In this document: in pieces, positions 10,301 to 27,542 of the stretch
How the letters are laid out: each line of letters opens with the position of its first letter
How positions within the stretch are numbered: position 1 is the stretch's first letter
From: Podarcis muralis
Taxonomy: Eukaryota
Direction: 5' to 3'
Assembly (NCBI RefSeq): GCF_964188315.1
Contig: NC_135655.1
Coordinates: forward strand, 85,436,001 to 85,500,000
DNA length: 64,000 bases
The notes under the pieces: model-generated
Database searches by the model: none
What the model was told of the DNA's origin: nothing
What the model saw: the letters and a program-made list of their open reading frames with translations, nothing else
Program-made: the position numbers and the translations under genes

Positions 10301-13300
10301 AGTGCTGTGTTGTATTCTGTTCTGCAAAAGTGTGTGCATGTGTCCCCATAGTGGGAAGAGGAGTAACAGTGGGAATGGGGTGCAAAAAGCCCCTGTTAAT
10401 GTGATTGTTTGAATCTGAGCCAGCATCCACATATATTACTGTACATATGAATTGAATTGAAATTGGAATGAATGGGAATTATTATTTCAATGTATGCTGA
10501 AAACGCACAGTGTAGCTGATTTGTATTAATAGGAATCTCTTCCTTCCCCTGTGCAGGAAAACGAAGCTTTCACTAAGACACCATGCTACCACTACTTTCA
10601 CTCACGTTGCCTTGCCAGTTATACAGAGCATATGGAGGAAGAGATCCGTGCAGAGAGGAAAGAAAGAGTACAGCCTTTGGCACCTCTGCCCAAAGAGGTA
10701 ATAGCTCCTTGCATGCACCCCACAGCTGCTTCTAGAACTTCACCAACTTTTTCCTCCAGGAATGGCTTCTGAATCTGGATCAACATTTCCAGTTCATTTT
10801 GGTTATTAGTTACGGCGTTGAGAGCTGTGGACAAGATTTTCCCAGATCAATGTTAAAATGGTTTTCCATGGTTCAGTGCTGTGCATACGTTCGCATTTGC
10901 AAGTTATTTTGTCTACAGAGAACAAAATGTTAAGTGATGTGTAAAGTCTGGGAATCTAGTTAAAGACCAGAGGAGATGGTCAACATATCTTCCTTTGCTT
11001 CAAATACTAAGGAACTGGGGTTCTGTAGATAAAGGCAATCTTCACAGCTGCAGTACAAGTGACCAAAAAGTATACTCACGTTATATCTTCTTGAACACCT
11101 GTGTTGGTGTGTTTCCTGGTGGTAAAGATTGTGAATGGACTACAACATACACAAAAAAGCTTTGCCAAGAAACAAAAGTTATCTTCCTCCACTCCCAAAC
11201 AATAGAATAGTTCTGAGGGCAGGGTTGCTAGTGGTGAATCTTCACTCTGAGATAATTTTTGCACTAGCTTTGATGCAAGTTGTGATTGCATTAGGAAGGC
11301 CCAGTAGCATCTTATAAAAGAGAACACTTTACTGGTGGATGTTTATAGAATGAAATTAATTACCGTATTTTTCGCTCTATAAGACATACTTTTCCCCTCC
11401 TAAAAAGTAATGGGAAATGTGTGTGCGTCTTATGGAGCACATGAATGCAGGCTGCGCAGCTGTCGCTGAAGCCAGGAGAGCAAGAGGGATTGGTGCGCAC
11501 CAATCCCTCTTGCTCTCCTGGCTTCAGGGACAGCTCCGCAAAGCCTCCTGAGCACAGTGGGGGCGCTCCTCCCGCTGCGCTCAGGAGGCTTTGTGTTGCT
11601 TTCTTGTTTTCCTCCTCTAAAAACTAGGTGCGTCTTATGGTCAGAGTGCGTCTTATAGAGTGAAAAATACGGTAAGTGCCCAGGAGGCTTGGATGATGAG
11701 CTCAGAATCCAGGCTGTCCCGTGACCTTTTAGTCAAACTGCACAACACTCTTCTGCCAATAACACTGTTGTTGAGTGCTAGAGCTCCCCAGGATGAGTAG
11801 CAGTTTATCAGGAAAATACTACTCTCTTAAGACACACTGGTGGAGTATGAGAACAGTAGCTGTATATCCCATGACTAGGTCTAACCAAGGCCGAATTTTG
11901 TTGTTATTACCTTCTGTACAGGAATTTGAAGTGCAGTGCCCTGTGTGCAGGGAGCCTCTGGTTTATGATCTTGCAACATTGCAAGCAGCACCACCTCCAC
12001 AGCAGCCAATGGTAAGGAAACTTTCAAAACAGACCTTTCACATGGACTTGCTGCTCTTTAAAAGATGCACCAGGCAGGCACCCTCTTGCTTCACTAATCT
12101 CTCTCACTTATTGGACCTGTTGGGCAACCCCATTTCTCCAAATGAGCTCTGTTAAGTGTTATTTCCAAATAATCATATACCTGGTGCTCTGTAGGCCTGC
12201 AGGTGGTTATGAGTTCTCTGTAGGCCTGCAGGTGGTTATGAGTCTTTCTTTTTGCCTGCCCCCCGGCAGCCCCTTTGCCCATCAGATCTGGAGGGTTGAG
12301 AGACCCAGAAGGCTCTGTTTGGGCCAGTCATCCAATTACATGCCTCTCTTTCCTCAGGAGGTGTACCAACCTGACACACAGACACTGCAGCACAGAGAAC
12401 AACTGCGCCTGATCTATCAGAAGCAGCAGGAGAAAGGAGGCATCATTGACCCTGAAGCAGAAAGAAATCGCTACTTCATCAGCCTGCAAAAGGTTAGTGC
12501 AGGCAGCAGGAGTACAAAGAGGATAATGGTCATAGGGAAAGAATGAAACAATGGAGGTAGCAATTTTTACTTGCTGAGACATCCTGTCTTGTAGCACAAG
12601 AGAGAGCTTTGATATTTGCATCCCAGGCAATTCTTTTAAAGTGCTGATGACTCTTGTTGCTGGCAATTTTGCAAGTTACTATAGGGAAAGATTTAAGCAG
12701 CAAAGCCTGGGGAAGACAGATGGGGTGACATCAATATATTAATTCCTGTGGGATCTTTGCCACTCAGACTGAGAATCAAGCCTGCTGGGTTTATGCATTT
12801 TCTGCCCTTCATTTTGGTTTCTATCCTTTTTAGCCCCCAGATACCACTGAACATGAACAAGTAGCCATCTCAGAAAATGTTCTGGATACTGACAAGGAAC
12901 TGAGGCCATCAGTCGGCTCAGAACATACCCAAGGAACTGCAGAGGCTGCTCTTCCAGTGAGGAATGAACCTGAAAAACCAGAGAGACCTTCTGTCCCTTT
13001 GCATTTCCATAGCAAGAGAGAGAGGACTCGAGAGGAGAAACCATCTATACAAGGCCCTGGCTGGCAGCTGCGCTACAAGTCACTGGAGACACCAGCAGAA
13101 ACTCATTGTCTTCTCACTGTTGAGGGGAAATCCAGAACCTTCAGTAGAAGACCCAACTGGAGAAAGGAGAGGGGACAGCGAAGCTGTGGGAGGTACAATC
13201 AAGACTTCTCAAAATCTTGCAGCAGAGACCAAGTGTCTTCACTGGTGGAGAAAAAAGAGCTGCGCACCAGAGGAATCTCACCAACCAAAGAGGGAATGTA

Positions 13301-13790: not shown

Positions 13791-15499
13791 TGGTAGCCAA
13801 ATGCTATTGCCCATGGGTAAACTGTAGGATCTTACAGTGAATCAGTGCTGTGTAGAGGGCTGTTTGAGGCTGAATCCCTGAACTAAAAGCCAAGCTTGAA
13901 AAATAACTATTAAGTAACCCTGTTCTAAAATAGGTGCTAAAAATAGAAGGACTATAAGGGAGTACAGGTCTCCTTGTTTACTGTCCAGAACTATGGAGAG
14001 GACTTGCCATTAATAGTGTCACTATTTTTAGACATGCCTTATTGATGGTATTGGCATATGTGAAAAGAGTGGACTTGAATCAACATTGACTTGGTGGCTG
14101 TTGACCACAGAGGGTTCTTTAAGCCCCCCAACTGTGGCCAGACTGAATGTTGGAGTCTCCCACTGCCTCATTGTAATTGGCTAATGTTCAGTAGTGATTG
14201 ACCTTGAACTGCAAACATCAAACATGCCTATTCTAAAGAGCCTTTAAATTATAAGAAGTCCAACTCCTTACTCACCCAGTAGTTGGATTTGGAGCTAGTA
14301 TTGGCAACAAAGGCTTCAGCTCCAGGTACACCAAGGCTCTTGTCTTTGCCTGTTTTCACAAATGTGATATCCTGCAATGGTTTACTAACTGTAATCCTGT
14401 CCAGAGTTCACGTGACTTATGTTTTGGGTCTTATCATCTTTGATTCGAGCCAAATTTGGTTTTGTTGGGGTGAGAAGTCTCTCATGCTCAGCTGGCTTTC
14501 CCCTCCTAACCTTATGGCTGTGTGTATGTGCATTCACCCACACACCATTCAAGAACAGCTCTACTCTCCATTTGGGAGGGTAATACCAATGTACCTACCT
14601 ATTTTTAGGCTACACAGTCCCTGTCATCTCCCTCAGCAAAATGCAGCCTTGTCTTCATGGGTATTTCTGCTCAGAGGAGGAGTCTGTAGCAATATGGAGT
14701 ACATGTGGCCACTATGCAAACATTTTGAACAGACTTTCCTCCACTTGTATTTCTATTTTGTCACATATATATGGCCTTCCTCCCCCCACAACAAATTTTA
14801 CCCTAGGCTGTGTGAAAGTTCCCAAGCTGCTTAAATTCCTTATATGTCTGCAAAATGTCCCCCCACCCCTCCCCAAGTGAAGCTTTGCCAGACTTCGTAA
14901 TTTTCCTTTTCTGCTTAGCCACAGTAACATTGTAGATGTGTGACAACTTTACAGAGCACAGTGGCCAAAATGACCTTACAATAGAAGTGTGACTGATTTT
15001 AAACCAGTTCATGCTAGAGGCTAAAGGATGTCATTACTTATTTGCATGCATGCACATATACCAGTTTGAGCAGTTCTGCCTATTAAAAGGATTGATGTGA
15101 GATTGATTTACCTCCCTGCACTGTGGTGAGGTGGAATTTGTGGTGATGTGATGCAAAACAGGAGTATTAAAAGCAATTTGAGTAAACCAATCTATGATTC
15201 TCTTTCGTGGATAAAGAACATAGCTGCTGCTGTGCTGCATGTGATGAGACCATTCAACATTAGAAACCATCTAAAAAGAGGCAGGGAGGTAATAACCTAT
15301 GACCCATGTAGTTTAGCTAAAATGAGGAACCTTTTGATTATAAATGAAAAACAATCGGGTTCTAATCTGGACATCTTTCTGTTGGATTCACATTTTCTTT
15401 TTTTTTCCTTCTTCTTTTTTGTAAACTATTCTTCTAAGGAGAAAGGCTGCTTCATTTTGCACCACTTGAAACTTCTGAACAATAATGAATGGTAGCCTA

Positions 15500-16790
15500 C
15501 ATAGAATATAAAACATGGGTAACACAGTATCTAGATCCTGATTGGATTTTCTGGACAGGGTTATAATACCGTTAAAGAAATTGGAGTTCTTGTTGAAAAT
15601 ACACTGAAATGGATATACAAAGAACTCTGGCCACAAGTTTCAATACAACGAATAGTTCCTACTCGAGAGTTGAAAAGAAAAACGTGTATATTCTGCTAAG
15701 AATAACAGTTTGAAGCTAATAGTAAATTTAAACACAACGTGTGAGTACGATAGTTTTAAGGTAATAGTAAATTTAGATACAACGTTTAATTGCAGAAATA
15801 ATGTAATTTCAAATATGGAGTGATATAGTATAAAGGTACATAAAATACCAGTAAACAACAATTGTTTTATACAAGTCTCAATGGCAGTCAAAAAGAGTCC
15901 ATATTATATAAAATCAGAACAAAGAATAAAGAATCAAATAGGGCCAAAAAGGAGTATCCGGAGTGTGAATCAGATGTACGACTCAGTAGTGGTGACCAGG
16001 ACAGGGCCCTGTTTCGGAGTAAACGCCTTCTTCAGCTGGTAATATCAAATAATATGTCAAAATAGAACAAGATTCTTCAATACCATAGATCATAAATATA
16101 ATAAAGTATATACATACTAAAGTGTATTAACACATATCATGATATTTGGTTCCATACCTCGGTTTTTTGAGGACTATAAATCTGTTGGAAGTCTATATCA
16201 TATAATTCTTTTGTGTTTCTTTTTTGACTTGCGTCTAGAAATAAGAATTTACAAGAGTTATTATTTCCAGTCAAATTATTTGTGAAAAACGGACAACAGA
16301 TGAGTGTTTTCTCACCTTAGATAATTGAATCCAAGTTTTCTTGCGTTTCTCTGTGCGTTTTCTATTAGGGAGTGAGATCATTGTCTTATATGTGTGTCTG
16401 TGGGGGAGGAGGATAGGCTCTCCCTTCTTAAAGGTGTAAACAGAGAAGGGATTTAAAGTCCAAGGTCATCTATAGTGGTTTTTTCAAAGAAAAGAACTGT
16501 AGTCTTGATGTTCATTCAAGCCCTTGGGGGACATCGTTTCAAACAAATGAATATATCGTGCTTCCTGTTGTAACAATAGTCTATCAATATTTCTCCTGGT
16601 ATATTAAATCTACTTTTGGTTTCCAGATAATGAAGAAGACAAAATCCTCCTCCATATGTTTTTGCTGTATATAATGTTCCACCATTGGGGCTTCTAGCAC
16701 TCTATCGGATCCTGATTGTTCTGCCTTCCTTTTTACCAATTGCTCTCGATCCTTTAAGGACTTTAGCCCTCATTTCATAAACCCACCCCA
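15500..16790 (-). mobile_element. Decayed, 5'-truncated Penelope-like retroelement (GIY-YIG endonuclease C-terminus plus 3' UTR/pLTR); boundaries approximate
   Basis: - strand translation EAPMVEHYIQQKH..FFIIWKPK, a frameshift, then NIDRLLLQQEARYIHLFETMSPKGLNEHQDYSSFL* (16591-16484) resembles the Penelope endonuclease C-terminal P.GLN motif. A hammerhead lies downstream on the same strand. Confidence 0.7.
15995..16040 (-). ncRNA. Minimal type I hammerhead ribozyme (Penelope-associated)
   Basis: - strand reads ACCAG CTGAAGA A-GGCG-TTTA-CTCC GAAA CAGGGCCCTG TC CTGGT. It has the CUGANGA and GAAA core, a 5-bp stem I (ACCAG/CTGGT), a short stem II, a palindromic stem III and a GUC cleavage triplet (predicted cut between 16000 and 15999). 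Confidence 0.8.
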
Positions 16791-17272
16791 TTTTCCCCCA
16801 TCATGTCCACATCCAGCAATTTCTTTTATAAAATTTCTGAAGTGCAGGATCTGTTTCTTCCTGAACCTTCCTAGTCTTTCCCATGCTTTCGCCTATTTGT
16901 CTGTGATATATTAGAGTTACTGTCCCACCCTGGGTTAAAACTAATACCTCAAGTATCTTCTCTCTCCACCCCCACCCCCCCAATGTATGAAAGAACAATT
17001 CCCCCTTTCCATGTTTTGCTGTTGTAACATTGGCAAGAAGAGCAAGTGCTGTTTCACACCTGGCTGTTGCTATAAATAGAAGTGGAACCACCCGCCTCAA
17101 GGAGAACACTCAATGGCACTAACAGTACGTCCTAACCCAGCCTGCATGGAGAACCTCATTGTAACCATTAACTCAGATCAAACAGACAGGAATCGTTAGA
17201 GATCTGGCAGTGCTGTTTACGGCATACGTAGCTTACTGCGCGCGCACACATATATATGTGCTTGTTTGTTTT

Positions 17273-17340
17273 TGTTTAGTCGTTTAGTCGTGTCTGACTC
17301 TTCGTGACCCCATGGACCAGAGCACGCCAGGCACTCCTGT
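17273..17340 (-). mobile_element. RTE-BovB LINE 3' end fragment
   Basis: gtttagtcgtttagtcgtgtctgactcttcgtgaccccatggaccagagcacgccaggc resembles the antisense BovB 3' tail as recalled. Confidence 0.55.
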
Positions 17341-17560
17341 GAGCGGTAGTCTTGTAATCTGGGGAACCAGGTTCGAGTCTCCGCTCCTCCACATGCAGCT
17401 GCTGGGTGACCTTGGGCCAGTCACACTTCTCTGAAGTCTCTCAGCCTCACTCACCTCACAGAATGTTTGTTGTGGGGGAGGAAGGGAAAGGAGAATGTTA
17501 GCTGCTTTGAGACTCCTTAAAGGGAGTGAAAGGCGGGATATCAAATCCAAACTCTTCTCT
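17341..17560 (+). mobile_element. CORE/MIR-like SINE remnant
   Basis: B-box-like ggttcgagtc, CORE-like gtgaccttgggccagtcacacttctct..cctcactcacctcacag, and tail aaggcgggatatcaaatcc. Confidence 0.5.
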
Positions 17561-22402: not shown

Positions 22403-25213
22403 TGTTTGTGCATGCTTTAGCCTCTCTCATTCAATCACTCATGAAGCTGTCAAACACATCTACCACCACAACACACAGGGAGACGCTGCAGTAGAAAATT
22501 GCTTGGGGCTGTTCAATTAAACATGTGCTAATATATTTCAGGTCTCCAATGTCTCCAGTATTGTGTGGGAACTAGAAAAGTTTGACGAGAACAATGTGTT
22601 GTTGACACATAGGGAAATAGCCACTCTCAAGAAACAACTGGCCGATTGCGAAGACTCTGTTACAAATCCCAATTCTGGCCTCTCTCCCTCTGGAAACTGG
22701 ACTCCAGAGTTTGGTGAGTCCTACCGTGTGATTGTGGGCTGGAACTTCTCCTTACATTGGTTTGTCTATAAGCTACATTATCATCATTATCATCACCATT
22801 ATCACCGTCACCAGTATTAATATTTATTTGTTGCTTTTTTCACAAAGGTGGCTGAAAGCAGCTTGTGCTGTAAAAACCACCATTAAAAAAAAAATCTAAG
22901 AAAAAGAATAACATCACGGCATAAAATGCTCATTGTATATAAAAGAGCAGATCCAAGTCAATCTGCCCCACTAAAAATGTGAGTGGAAGAAGACACCACA
23001 AACATAGTTAAGTACTCTCCCAAATGAAGGCCCAAAAGCCTAGGAGAATTAAAAAAATGTTTTTGCCTGGGACCTAAAGGCAGATAACGCAACCAGGCAT
23101 GCCTCCCTGGGGAAAGCGCTCTACAAACGGGGAGCCACCACTGAGAAGGCTTGCTTCAGTCTGGTCACCCCACAAACTTAATCCAGCTTCTTCTCACAAC
23201 TAGCACATCCTCAGCGAGCTATTTGAGGCACCACCTGACCCAGGAAAATTTTACCGTCATTTAAGCTTTGAGCTCTTTCACTAGATCAGTTCTCAGTCTG
23301 TACCGGTAGAGATCAGGGTAAAAGGAATTTCCTAATAATTACTGGATTACCTCCCACTTAATAGTTCTTTATATTATAAAGAGGCCTGCAGAGCCCTTCT
23401 GGTGCCACAGGGTCCCCCCGCCATTTGACATTAGACTTGAAAGAAGCATTCTGTTGCACTTACTAATAGAATGTAGCATGTGCTTGTGCTTAGTGCTCAC
23501 AGCAGTTCTCAGGTTTGCAAATGATCCCAAAAGGGATGATGACCACCTGCTTTAGTGAGAATTTTGGAAGGCAAACATGTAATGAACAGCTGATCAATGA
23601 CAGTACAGAGGAGGAATTGGGAAGCATTATGCAGAGAAAACACAGCAGGGCAGAGGAGTCTGGTTTGGGGGCCTGACCCGTTTTCTAAACGCAGTGGGAT
23701 AAAACTTGGCAGAGCTTTTGAAACCAGCAGAATGCCTAACATGGTCACAGAAAACAAAGATGATTTAGTTACTTATCTTGTAAAATTTATGCACCTCTTG
23801 ATTATTAAAAAAACCAAAAAAAAACACAAAAAAAAACCTCAGAGCAGTTTGAAGGCGGAGAAAAACTTGTCAAGAGGAGCCACAAACAAAAGTAATTCCC
23901 TTTCTATTCCCTGGCAGGTAACTGCGACAACAAGGTGTTGATAAACGTTAAAGGTAAAGGTACCCCTGCCCGTATGGGCCAGTCTTGACAGACTCTAGGG
24001 TTTTGCGCCCATCTCACTCAAGAGGCCGGGGGCCAGCGCTGTCCGGAGACACTTCCGGGTCACGTGGCCAGCGTGACAAGCTGCATCTGGCGAGCCAGCG
24101 CAGCACACGGAAACGCCGTTTACCTTCCTGCTAGTAAGCGGTCCCTATTTATCTACTTGCACCCGGGGGTGCTTTCGAACTGCTAGGTTGGCAGGCGCTG
24201 GGACCGAGCAACTGGAGTGCACCCCGCCGTGGGGATTCGAACCGCCGACCTTTCGATTGGTAAGTTCTAGGCACTGAGGCTTTTACCCACAGCGCCACCC
24301 GCGTCCCTGTCTGATAAACGTTAGCAAGCCACTTATAGTGAAACTCAACTGGCGAGGTTTAAGCTACAAATTCGGAGCTTGGGGAAAGGACTTTGCTGTT
24401 GGAAACAAGACTCCTGACGCATACTGGGTTGCCCCGCTCAACACAGACGAGCGTTTGTTGGAAACCTACTGCATCTACAACTATTCCGACCTGCTGTTCT
24501 ACAAAAGCCAAATAGAGAAAAGCCTTTCTCAATTTGTTGGGTTCACCTGGAACTACATCAACTGTGGGCAGGGAAGCGGAACTATTTTGTACAACGGCAG
24601 CTTCTATTACAACTGCTACAACTCCAGGAACCTGTGCAAGCTGGATGTGGCAACCAGTAAGGTCCACCGCAAGACCGTCGAAGACGCCGTGTTCAACAAC
24701 TGGTACTCTTATAGCGGAATCAATTGGCATGACTTTGATTTCTCCGGGGATGAGAATGGACTGTGGCTCATTTACTCCACGGAAAAAAACAAGGGGAAAA
24801 TAATGATTGGGCAGCTGGATCCCAATACTCTGACAATAGTCAAGTCATGGCAAACCTCACTGTACAAGCCTAAGGCAACTGGTACCTTCATGATCTGTGG
24901 GGTGATGTATTCCTTGATGCGGGTGAGTGAACACAAGGAGAAGAGCTTTTACAAATATGACACTAACACAGCCACAGAAGGCTCTATGGACATCATCCTG
25001 GAAAAGCTCACAGGCACACCGCAAAGCATAAGCTACAACCCCAATGATCACAAGCTATACATGTACAATGATGGCTACCTGGTCAGTTATGATGTGATAT
25101 TCCGACGCGTACCCCTGTTCCAAAAGAGGAGCGTGGTCAGTGTGAAAGAGCCAGATACTTTTGCGATGGTCAGTAAAAACCACTTCAGCTCACGAGACTT
25201 TGCCATAGCCTGA
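19022..25213 (+). CDS. Olfactomedin-4-like secreted glycoprotein gene; last exon interrupted by a SINE, first exon unresolved, may be a young pseudogene
   Basis: Phase-consistent exons 19022-19195 (KCICSIELPDTTFP, cf. OLFM4 CQCSVSLPDTTFP), 20138-20347 (coiled coil), 22542-22713 (LEKFDENNVLLTHREIATLKKQLADCE), and a terminal exon 23918-23950 + 24324-25213 (GNCDNKVLINVSKPLIVKLNWRG..YWVAPL..GQGSG..DFDFSGDENGLWLIYST..FMICGVMY..SISYNPNDHKLYMYNDGYLVSYD). The exon and phase pattern mirrors OLFM4 as recalled. About 492 aa without the first exon. Confidence 0.85.
21433..21846 (-). mobile_element. L2-clade LINE 3' fragment with (TTA)n tail
   Basis: ORF VLTFKALNGLGPVYLKEHL..RTLRSS..RAFSVVSPALWNALP..FRRHLKAALF is the typical L2 ORF2 C-terminus; (AAT)n tail at about 21433-21482. 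Confidence 0.85.
22185..22310 (-). mobile_element. CR1-tailed SINE (Squam2-like)
   Basis: Antisense CR1 tail catagaattatagagttggaaggga.. joined to a tRNA-like head (gggcttgaactc). Confidence 0.5.
22345..22406. repeat. Compound (CT)n(GT)n microsatellite
   Basis: Directly visible. Confidence 0.9.
23951..24311 (-). mobile_element. Full-length young Sauria (Squam1-type) SINE inserted in a coding exon
   Basis: 5' end GGGACGCGGGTGGCGCTGTGGG (A box), GGTTCGAATCC (B box), (ACCTTT)n 3' tail; exact 12-bp TSD TGATAAACGTTA at 23939-23950 and 24312-24323. Confidence 0.92.
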
Positions 25214-25876: not shown

Positions 25877-27542
25877 TCAGGATATAAGAGCTTGCACGTT
25901 CTTAAGGGCTGCGTCCGGATCCGCCTTGTATAGCATGAAGTGGCCTTGGACTTGCGCGGCACTGATCTGATCAGAGGCAGACACGGCCTGTTTGGCAAAC
26001 TCCTCGGCCGCAGCTGCTGGCTGGTCTGGGTAGAACCTCTGGAACATGCGCCCGAGCTGCCACTCTGAGCAGTACCCCACATACTGCTTCAGGTCCACCC
26101 GGCCAGGGCGAACTAGGGCTGGATCGAGCCTGCAGGTAAAGAGGAGAAGACAAATGAGGCTCAGCAAATGCTCAGGTGGGAAATATGGTTCTCTATGCTC
26201 CTCTCACTTGGGGTATCACCTCCTTGTTCTCTCTCCAACCCCAAGAAGATACAGGGCTAGGGGAATCTTCTCTCCCCTTTATTTTTTTGAGCTACTCTCT
26301 AAAAGAATATAAAGTAACAGTGCCTTGTGATTTAACTGCACCCACGTCTTGCTGCACTCACCCATCATGCACCTCTTTCTCCATACCTGCCAAGTTACCC
26401 ATCCCCTCCTACAATCTCAGAGGAGCCTGCATGGAACCAGGAACAGTAAACAAGGACAGAACCAGATCTTCAGCTTCTGTGTTAAATGCTGGAAACCAGC
26501 ATGACCAAAGGAGGCAGAAGTCCATATGTATATATACCCCAGACCACTCCCTAACAAGCATGACCCCAGCGTTACCCAAAACCTTACCCAGCCAGTTTTA
26601 ACTGGCTGACCCTGTCTGCTGAGCATTTGCTCTTCTACCCTACACATGACTCCTTCAGCACCAGGCTACATGGCTGGCAGAGTCCTGTGCTTGTGGGAGA
26701 GGATGTGTCACAGGTCTTGGAGACTACAAGAGCCCCAAGATAAGATTCTCTTCCGTCTTCTCCTATAGTATCATCTTCTGGAACAGGAAGTGTGTCTTCA
26801 TTCCTGCCGCCTTCCTCCTTTTTATACTTAAAATAGTTACCAGCTGGTCCCCAGAAAGGCAGACTTTGCCTCATAAAGACAGCACTTCCAAGGGCTGGGA
26901 CACAAACTGCCCTCCTCTGTTACTCACTGCAATCTCCTTCTTGACTGAGTTACAAGGAAGCTCATGGAGTTGCCTTGTGTGAGCTAGGGATGGACGGATC
27001 AGTTTATTTGGGGTCCATGTCCAAAGTGTTACAGGTGTTAAGTCTCCTCTGTTGCTTTTCCACTTTAAGATCTGTATTTTTTTTATTTAAAAAATCCATA
27101 CAAAAATTCGTATTTAAAAATGCATTTTATTATAAATGCATATTTAAATAGTATTTATCGCAGGGTATGCATCTCTAAATGCATTTCCTCCTAAAAATAA
27201 TAATAAATCTTAATGCATTTTGGGAACCAAGGACAGTATTGCAAAATTTGGGGGAGTGGGGAAGCTGAAGGATAATTGTGAATTCGTTTGGGAGGTACAA
27301 ATTTGGCTAGCTTGCTTGAAAATGCAAACAAAACAAAACTCTCCTCCACCCCTAGCTTGTCCTCACCTCAAAAACACCAATGGAGACATCTTAGGCACTG
27401 TGTTACTTGAGGAATCCTTGGTCCCACCAAGGGAAGTGAACCCTTTGGATCGAAGTGGCCTACCACCAAAGGGACTCCATTTGCAGGCTTCCTCCCAGCC
27501 ACTGAGCGGTGAAGTAGGCTGATTTGCTGGAATACTGGTCCT

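What the first reader, a model, noticed from the sequence alone, without database searches (positions are those of the whole stretch)
15995..16040. Intact-looking minimal hammerhead ribozyme with a palindromic stem III, antisense just upstream of the OLFM4-like gene
Seen (- strand): ACCAG-CUGAAGA-A-GGCG[UUUA]CUCC-GAAA-CAGGGCCCUG-UC^-CUGGU. The catalytic-core nucleotides are present; stem I is 5 bp; stem II is GG/CC plus one pair around a mismatch with an extra A after the core; stem III is the loopless palindrome CAGGGCCCUG. Established: Penelope-like retroelements carry such minimal type I hammerheads, and palindromic stem III is thought to support dimeric cleavage. Inference: the motif looks better preserved than the frameshifted host ORF, so it may still cleave antisense or RNF25-convergent transcripts. 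I found only one intact copy, so cleavage would probably need a trans dimer.
Basis: partly seen in the sequence, partly recalled or inferred. Interest (0 to 1): 0.8.

Follow-up and report, generated by a model that had tools for sequence, protein, structure and literature searches.

The report
Retrotransposon-borne hammerhead motif in lizard DNA
The hammerhead ribozyme motif is real, but it is one of many copies carried by an abundant Penelope-type jumping gene of this lizard, and nothing shows that this single copy cuts RNA or affects the neighbouring genes.

Summary
It has a full hammerhead core, a perfect 5-bp stem I, an extra A after A9, G10.1-C11.1 and a 12-nt palindromic helix III. It is not a chance match: 700 random windows gave none.

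It is not a stand-alone gene. Contigs from two DNA runs show it inside a roughly 1.1-kb copy (about 15572-16703, minus strand) of a very abundant repeat. Depth there is 30-170 times that of the flanks and rises toward the 3' end, as in 5'-truncated retroelements.

The 122 nt just upstream of the CUGAAGA box form a GT..AG intron, and intron-less DNA copies also exist. Intron retention is a Penelope-like element (PLE) hallmark. As in Drosophila virilis Penelope, the intron ends at helix I.

- **PLE membership is incomplete.** No reverse transcriptase or endonuclease homology could be shown in this decayed copy.
- **Folding.** Helix II is weak, the monomer fold is disfavoured, and a dimer fold is accessible.
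- **No partner, little RNA.** There is no second copy in 64 kb and almost no RNA, and Rfam models do not match.

Verdict: an ordinary member of a known kind. The scan has already noted about 109 hammerhead/Penelope sites in this genome.

The parts
15995..16040 (-). Minimal type I hammerhead motif. Stem I is 16040-16036 with 15999-15995. The CUGAAGA box is 16035-16029 and the extra A is 16028. Helix II is 16027-16016 and GAAA is 16015-16012. The 12-nt palindrome is 16012-16001, C17 is 16000, and the predicted cut is 16000/15999.
16036..16157 (-). Retained 122-nt AT-rich spliceosomal-type intron (GT..AG on the minus strand, branch-like TTTTGAC 24 nt before the AG). Its last 5 nt, ACCAG, form the 5' strand of hammerhead stem I.
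   Evidence: table 5: contigs of two DNA runs join 16035 to 16158, with ends CT..AC on the plus strand. One search gives the intron sequence and shows that the spliced reading ends in a stop at the UGA of the CUGA box.
15572..16703 (-). 5'-truncated copy of a very abundant interspersed retroelement (Penelope-like type). The 3' end at 15572 +/- 3 is well supported. The 5' end is at 16703 or some tens of nt beyond.
   Evidence: summed word depth is 13-19 in the flanks, 400-2300 from about 15578 to 16225, and 58-1200 up to about 16703. Loose ends with differing flanks lie at 15570-15575. A longer copy runs on beyond 16703; homology probably continues a little past 16703 (p about 0.03).
15572..15994 (-). 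About 420-nt AT-rich 3' part of the element, downstream of the predicted cut. It contains a 34-nt direct repeat pair (15707-15740 and 15752-15785).
16158..16769 (-). Decayed coding remains upstream of the intron. The pieces are at most 64 codons long in all frames. A weak lead points to a GIY-YIG endonuclease. This copy has private 1-nt indels at 16485 and 16604.
   Evidence: table 4; Atlas best named cluster GIY-YIG, score 0.80, a lead only. Negative.
15534..15544 (.). Left copy of an 11-nt direct repeat, GATCCTGATTG (right copy at 16708-16718). It may be a target-site duplication, with 15545-15571 as a PLE-type 'tail'. This is uncertain, because the right copy seems to lie in sequence still homologous to longer copies.
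   Evidence: The tail concept comes from PMC8557442 and PMC11167929.

Best explanation
The motif is the hammerhead ribozyme of a Penelope-like retroelement (PLE) family that is very abundant in this lizard genome. The copy here is 5'-truncated, lies on the minus strand (about 16703 or a little beyond, down to about 15572), and sits between a RING-finger gene and an olfactomedin gene.

Read 5' to 3', it holds decayed coding remains, a retained 122-nt GT..AG intron, the hammerhead, and a 420-nt AT-rich 3' part.

The motif was inherited from the element's master copies. There it presumably acts in tandem or pLTR-containing transcripts as a double hammerhead: the 12-nt palindrome makes an intermolecular helix III, possibly helped by the element's own protein. 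The intron's 3' splice site lies inside stem I. Unspliced RNA therefore has a perfect 5-bp stem I. Spliced RNA has a bulged stem I, and its reading frame stops at the UGA of the CUGA box.

Shown here: the motif, the repeat membership, the depth gradient, the intron-less DNA copies and the fold energies.

Inferred: PLE identity, the role in element RNA processing, and that this solitary copy is inert. It has no partner within 64 kb, a weak helix II, a disfavoured monomer fold and almost no RNA.
For: Motif and chance:
- The motif is as described.
- 0 hits in 300 plus 400 random windows, against 1 in the real window.

Repeat membership:
- Summed contig depth is 13-19 in the flanks against 400-2300 over 15578-16225.
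- Depth rises toward the minus-strand 3' end.
- 107 and 97 contigs were laid, 90-99% alike.
- Loose ends with different flanks lie at 15570-15575.

RNA-mediated copying with intron retention:
- The joint 16035->16158 appears in DNA contigs of two runs from two studies, with GT..AG ends on the minus strand (sequence).
- Intron retention is described as a PLE peculiarity (PMC8557442).
- In D. virilis Penelope the intron ends at the 5' end of helix I (PMC4209133).

The motif shows the emergent features of metazoan PLE min-HHRs listed in PMC4209133:
- an unpaired nucleotide between A9 and 10.1;
- G10.1-C11.1;
- a 4-5 bp helix I;
- a palindromic helix III.

Folding:
- The monomer hammerhead fold is -6.0 kcal/mol against an MFE of -10.1 (P about 4e-4).
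- The double hammerhead is -32.7 against a dimer MFE of -35.7, and against -20.2 for two monomers.

Other points:
- Near-identical words occur in a second species and in many small contig sets.
- A lizard PLE hammerhead (Anolis Poseidon) has been tested: it cleaves only with the PLE protein, and no RNA-seq ends are seen at its cut site (PMC11167929).
- Unchecked leads: the scan holds 109 notes on hammerhead/Penelope in this genome, two of them describing the same variant.
Against: - No reverse transcriptase or GIY-YIG homology could be shown in this copy. Pfam at E<=10 gave nothing relevant. HMMER against 1.84 billion proteins gave 0 hits. PDB and the word search gave none. The only support is a language-model lead at 0.80 and an R..EH-like reading of 30 loose letters of a longer copy.
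- Helix II is 4 bp with a C.U mismatch, whereas published metazoan PLE min-HHRs usually have 6-8 bp.
- Rfam hammerhead models give no hit.
- No copy of the family could be fetched, so there is no covariation evidence.
- The run types are guesses ('DNA?', '?'). Even coverage of the unique intergenic flanks argues that they are DNA.
Confidence: 0.85

Rival explanations
1. The repeat is not a truncated autonomous PLE. It is a non-autonomous PLE derivative (a retrozyme- or SINE-like element) that keeps only the pLTR region with the hammerhead plus non-coding remains, and is mobilised in trans by PLE proteins.
For: - All three frames upstream of the motif are broken into pieces of at most 64 codons. 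Yet the laid copies are 90-99% alike, so many breaks are probably shared by the family.
- No protein homology was found.
- A 2026 preprint argues that animal non-LTR retrozymes derive from PLE pLTRs and occur in 4 of 5 reptiles sampled (10.64898/2026.07.22.740005).
- An unchecked scan note describes a 487-bp TSD-flanked insertion with the same kind of hammerhead.
Against: - At least two of the frame breaks (16485, 16604) are private to this copy.
- The depth gradient fits 5' truncation of a longer unit.
- A longer copy continues upstream with an R..EH-like reading.
- No tandem array is present here, unlike typical retrozymes.
Confidence: 0.25
2. The motif has been taken over by the host. It cleaves minus-strand (antisense) transcripts between the RING-finger gene and the olfactomedin gene, and so affects their expression.
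For: - The core is intact and no variant letters are listed in 15966-16064.
- The position is intergenic, about 3 kb upstream of the olfactomedin-like gene.
Against: - RNA is near zero: 14-16 reads of about 12.7 million per run, mostly under 99% alike, with mixed strands and no pile of ends at the cut site.
- There is no dimer partner in 64 kb, and the monomer fold is disfavoured.
- The invariance is shared by the whole young family, so it says nothing about this locus.
- The tested lizard PLE hammerhead needs the PLE protein to cleave (PMC11167929).
Confidence: 0.03
3. The motif is a chance match to a loose hammerhead descriptor.
For: - No Rfam hit.
- Helix II is weak.
- The scan looked at very many windows.
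Against: - 0 hits in 700 random windows, even when stem I was dropped.
- The motif lies in the deepest central part of a high-copy repeat and is invariant among the laid copies.
- It shows features not needed for a descriptor match: the extra nucleotide after A9, G10.1-C11.1 and the 12-nt palindrome.
Confidence: 0.02

Closest known systems
Minimal hammerheads of metazoan Penelope-like elements (Cervera & De la Pena 2014, PMC4209133)
   Same: Type I topology, a 5-bp helix I, an unpaired nucleotide between A9 and 10.1, G10.1-C11.1, a palindromic helix III that implies dimeric action, dispersed mostly solitary copies, and a position near the element's 3' part.
   Different: Helix II is short (4 bp with a C.U mismatch), not 6-8 bp. 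Helix III is a long 12-nt palindrome rather than no helix or a 2-nt one, so a 4-bp hairpin with a GGCC loop is also possible in the monomer.
Drosophila virilis Penelope hammerhead with adjoining intron (PMC4209133; Arkhipova et al. 2003, cited there)
   Same: A spliceosomal intron ends exactly at the 5' side of helix I, so spliced and unspliced RNAs have different hammerheads. Helix III is palindromic. [quoted passage not shown]
   Different: The host is a vertebrate and the sequence is different. Here the unspliced form has the better stem I (5 bp perfect), and the spliced reading puts the ORF stop in the CUGA box. Splicing itself was not observed in RNA here, only intron-less DNA copies.
Anolis carolinensis Poseidon (PAc) hammerhead (PMC11167929)
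   Same: A lizard PLE hammerhead that overlaps the ORF boundary. In that study there was no self-cleavage without the PLE protein, and RNA-seq showed no ends at the cut site. That matches the weak fold and the absence of ends here. An optional 30-40-bp tail at the insertion end has a possible counterpart at 15545-15571.
   Different: In PAc the ORF start lies at stem II. Here there is no AUG in the motif, and it is the ORF end that meets the CUGA box. No sequence comparison with PAc was possible with the tools.
Rfam Hammerhead_1 / HH9 / HH10 (type I hammerheads of animals)
   Same: The same catalytic core and topology.
   Different: No match at E<=10. Those families have 4-bp helix II and 6-bp helix I with loop-loop contacts, which are absent here.

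Membership tests
Hammerhead ribozyme | Conserved core: CUGANGA, GAAA with A15.1-U16.1, and a non-G at position 17 | tested here: met
   CUGAAGA, GAAA, U16.1, C17.
Hammerhead ribozyme | Three helices around the core | tested here: inconclusive
   Helix I is 5 bp and helix III is 4 bp with a loop, or 12 bp as a dimer: both met. Helix II has 3 pairs and 1 mismatch and is not stable alone. The monomer fold is 4 kcal/mol above the MFE. The dimer fold is within 3 kcal/mol of the MFE.
Hammerhead ribozyme | Match to a curated covariance model (Rfam) | tested here: not met
   no hammerhead family at gathering score or at E<=10. Minimal PLE hammerheads are not modelled by these families.
Hammerhead ribozyme | Mg2+-dependent self-cleavage after position 17 | not testable with these tools
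   RNA reads show no pile of ends at 15999/16000, but coverage is only a few reads.
Penelope-like element | ORF with a telomerase-like reverse transcriptase and a GIY-YIG endonuclease | tested here: inconclusive
   This copy is 5'-truncated and decayed. There were no Pfam, HMMER, PDB or word hits. The only support is an Atlas lead to GIY-YIG at 0.80 and an R..EH-like reading of a longer copy's loose end. No RT motif occurs anywhere in the window.
Penelope-like element | Hammerhead motif in the pLTR / 3' region with the min-HHR traits | tested here: met
   against the traits listed in PMC4209133. Helix II length is the exception.
Penelope-like element | Retention of spliceosomal introns in genomic copies | tested here: met
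   table 5: the 122-nt GT..AG segment is present here and absent in other DNA copies.
Penelope-like element | Frequent 5' truncation, a common 3' end, and an optional 30-40-bp tail with a TSD | tested here: inconclusive
   The depth gradient and common 3' end at about 15572 are met. The tail and TSD are only a candidate: an 11-nt repeat that is questioned.
Non-LTR retrozyme | Tandem head-to-tail units, each with a hammerhead | tested here: not met
   There is a single motif in 64 kb and no tandem unit.

The most novel reading that the evidence does not exclude
In this vertebrate PLE family the 3' splice site of a retained intron is built into hammerhead stem I, as in Drosophila virilis Penelope. 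Splicing and ribozyme folding would then be coupled. Unspliced RNA forms the perfect stem I and can be cut. Spliced RNA gets a weakened stem I, and its ORF stop comes from the CUGA box. If this layout is shared between insects and lizards by descent, it would point to an old functional link between splicing, translation and self-cleavage in the PLE life cycle.
Probability: 0.2. Interest if true: 0.55.

Novelty: new member of a known kind. Interest (0 to 1): 0.2.

Why it matters
For this locus it matters little. The motif is passenger sequence of a common retroelement, and there is no sign that it touches the RING-finger or olfactomedin genes.

For the biology of Penelope-like elements it adds a lizard family whose hammerhead has a long palindromic helix III and an intron ending inside stem I. 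That is the same layout as in D. virilis, and it could be used to test whether splicing and ribozyme cleavage are linked in these elements.

It also shows that Rfam models miss this class. Genome scans will keep 'rediscovering' such motifs unless repeats are masked first.

Tried and rejected
- Rfam at gathering score and at E<=10: no hammerhead hit.
- A second copy or tandem partner in the window: none.
- The decayed upstream ORF pieces gave nothing in Pfam, in HMMER against 1.84 billion representatives, in PDB sequences or in the word-based homologue search. The Atlas gave only a 0.80 lead to GIY-YIG.
- Exact-pattern scans for the motif in viral and metagenome contigs: 0 hits, so no copy from elsewhere could be fetched and no covariation analysis was possible.
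- RT motif scan of the whole window: only an unrelated YIDD.
- A partial tandem copy downstream of the 3' end: the local alignment was no better than shuffles (31 of 200).
- Scan lookup by sequence: blank.
- The chance explanation is rejected.
- The host-function explanation is not supported.

Full report
**Observation.** The minus strand from 16040 to 15995 reads ACCAG-CUGAAGA-A-GGCG-UUUA-CUCC-GAAA-CAGGGCCCUG-UC-CUGGU. Every hammerhead core position is present. Stem I has five Watson-Crick pairs. A15.1 and U16.1 extend the palindrome to 12 nt (ACAGGGCCCUGU). The predicted cut lies after C17, between 16000 and 15999. Helix II is the weak part: G-C, G-C, a C.U mismatch, then G-C closing a UUUA loop, preceded by an unpaired A.

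A descriptor scan of my own found this one site in the window. It found none in 300 random windows of the same dinucleotide make-up, and none in 400 more even when stem I was not required. No Rfam family matches, either at gathering score on the whole window or at E<=10 on 451 nt. The curated hammerhead models do not cover this minimal type.

**What surrounds it.** I laid contigs of two DNA runs from two studies, and raw reads of two RNA runs, on 15200-16800 at 80% likeness.

- Summed contig depth is 13-19 up to about 15570.
- It jumps to 400-2300 between about 15578 and 16225, stays at 58-1200 up to about 16703, and falls back to about 12 beyond.
- About 100 contigs per run lie on the stretch, mostly 90-99% alike.
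- Several contigs break off at 15570-15575 into different flanks. That marks the common 3' end of a minus-strand element.
- Depth falls toward higher coordinates, as expected for 5'-truncated retroelement copies.
- One contig of a longer copy runs on beyond 16703. Its 30 loose letters align through 16705-16720 of the locus with two gaps (p about 0.03), so the 5' end of this copy is only roughly placed.
- The bins that hold the hammerhead are two to five times deeper than their immediate neighbours, and no variant letter at a share of 10% or more is listed between 15966 and 16064. Many are listed on either side.

The motif is therefore the best-kept part of the family. That also means the laid copies offer no covariation.

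**The intron.** Table 5 shows contigs in both DNA runs that join 16035 directly to 16158. The 122 nt they skip begin with GT and end with AG on the minus strand (sequence).

- The 5' site is GAG|GTATGG.
- A TTTTGAC branch-like site lies 24 nt before the AG.
- The segment is AT-rich and has no terminal inverted repeats.
- The chance that a random deletion has GT..AG ends is about 1%, allowing for the 2-nt ambiguity.

The family therefore exists in the genome both with and without a spliceosomal-type intron. This means copying through RNA with frequent intron retention, a peculiarity described for Penelope-like elements (PMC8557442).

The intron's last five bases, ACCAG, are the 5' strand of hammerhead stem I. 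In the intron-less form the exon end ACCGAG takes their place, which gives a stem I with a bulged G. The reading frame then runs ...K-K-P-S-stop, the stop being the UGA of the CUGA box. Cervera and De la Pena reported the same layout for D. virilis Penelope: the intron ends at the 5' end of helix I, so spliced and unspliced RNAs carry different hammerheads (PMC4209133).

**Is it a Penelope-like element?** The motif shows the traits that paper lists as emerging in metazoan PLE hammerheads without being part of the search descriptor:

- a nucleotide between A9 and 10.1;
- G10.1-C11.1;
- a 4-5-bp helix I;
- a palindromic helix III.

Helix II is shorter than the 6-8 bp typical there.

The protein test failed. 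The minus strand upstream of the intron is broken into pieces of at most 64 codons, and none of these searches gave a relevant hit:

- Pfam at E<=10;
- HMMER against 1.84 billion proteins;
- PDB sequences;
- the word-based homologue search.

The only hints are a language-model neighbour cluster in which 15% of members carry GIY-YIG (score 0.80, a lead only) and an R..EH-like reading of the longer copy's loose end. Two of the frame breaks (1-nt indels at 16485 and 16604) are private to this copy (table 4).

PLE identity thus rests on the hammerhead type, the intron retention, the truncation pattern and the literature, not on RT/EN homology. A non-autonomous PLE derivative remains a live alternative (10.64898/2026.07.22.740005).

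An 11-nt direct repeat (15534-15544 and 16708-16718) could be a target-site duplication, with 15545-15571 as the optional PLE 'tail' (PMC8557442, PMC11167929). However, the right copy seems to lie within element sequence, so I leave this open.

**How it would work.**

- As a monomer, the hammerhead fold costs -6.0 kcal/mol against an MFE of -10.1. In the MFE, the 3' strand of stem I pairs into the palindrome. The probability of the hammerhead fold is about 4e-4.
- Two molecules in the double-hammerhead arrangement (intermolecular helices I and III) reach -32.7 kcal/mol. That is within 3 kcal/mol of the dimer MFE (-35.7) and far below two monomers (-20.2).
- This fits the published view that PLE hammerheads act in tandem transcripts as dimers and are poor ribozymes on their own (PMC4209133).
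- In the one lizard PLE tested (Anolis Poseidon), cleavage needed the PLE protein and was not required for insertion in vitro. No RNA-seq reads ended at the cut site (PMC11167929).

At this locus there is no second motif within 64 kb. Only 14 and 16 RNA reads of about 12.7 million per run lay on the stretch. Most were under 99% alike, they fell on both strands, and no ends piled up. The copy is present in both DNA individuals: contigs cross the 3' junction, and no empty-site joint was seen. I therefore regard this copy as an inert passenger.

**Context.**

- The olfactomedin domain lies on the plus strand at 24338-25213 (E 6e-64).
- A RING-finger piece lies on the plus strand at 10551-10772.
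- A BCS1 lid domain lies on the minus strand at 25877-26167.

Only a minus-strand transcript could carry the ribozyme, and none is evident.

**Spread.** A second run search shows that the 261 nt around the motif are held by many small contig sets of the same species (share of words 0.61-0.73; their type is guessed as RNA but unconfirmed). A second species holds them at 0.46-0.50. The scan's own index holds 109 notes with the words hammerhead and Penelope in this genome. Two of them describe the same variant, with an extra nucleotide after CUGAAGA and a 12-nt palindromic stem III. These notes are unchecked leads, but they agree with the depth result.

**Verdict.** It is a Penelope-type hammerhead built for dimeric action, but it is one of many copies of a known kind of element, and there is no evidence for activity or host function here. 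The intron ending inside stem I is the most interesting detail, and it has a published precedent in Drosophila.

Noticed in passing
window 16036-16157 (minus strand): A 122-nt GT..AG intron is retained in this retroelement copy, and intron-less copies exist as DNA. The 3' splice site lies inside hammerhead stem I, and the spliced reading stops at the UGA of the CUGA box.
   Followed up: partly
window 17280-17400 (minus strand): A SINE-like tail (…ccatggggtcacgaagagtcagacacgactaaacgactaaacaa…), of the type common in squamates, lies about 600 nt upstream of the element. It fits the scan's Sauria SINE notes for this window.
   Followed up: no
window 15707-15785: A pair of 34-nt direct repeats, 45 nt apart and 88% alike, lies inside the AT-rich 3' part of the element.
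   Followed up: no
window 15445-15481: A short stretch in the otherwise single-copy left flank has raised contig depth and loose ends on both sides in both DNA runs. It may be a fragment of another repeat.
   Followed up: no
window 15644: Four RNA reads of run X24 match the element up to 15644 and then continue into unrelated G+C-rich sequence (GTAGGGAGTGGTTCC…). These are transcripts of another copy or a related family embedded elsewhere.
   Followed up: no
window 15534-15544 and 16708-16718: An 11-nt direct repeat, GATCCTGATTG, brackets the element (rough chance about 0.004). It may be a TSD with a 27-nt PLE-type tail, or microhomology within element sequence.
   Followed up: partly
window 15900-16160: Near-identical words of the hammerhead region are held by runs of a second species (organism B, share 0.46-0.50). 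The family is therefore shared between at least two species.
   Followed up: no
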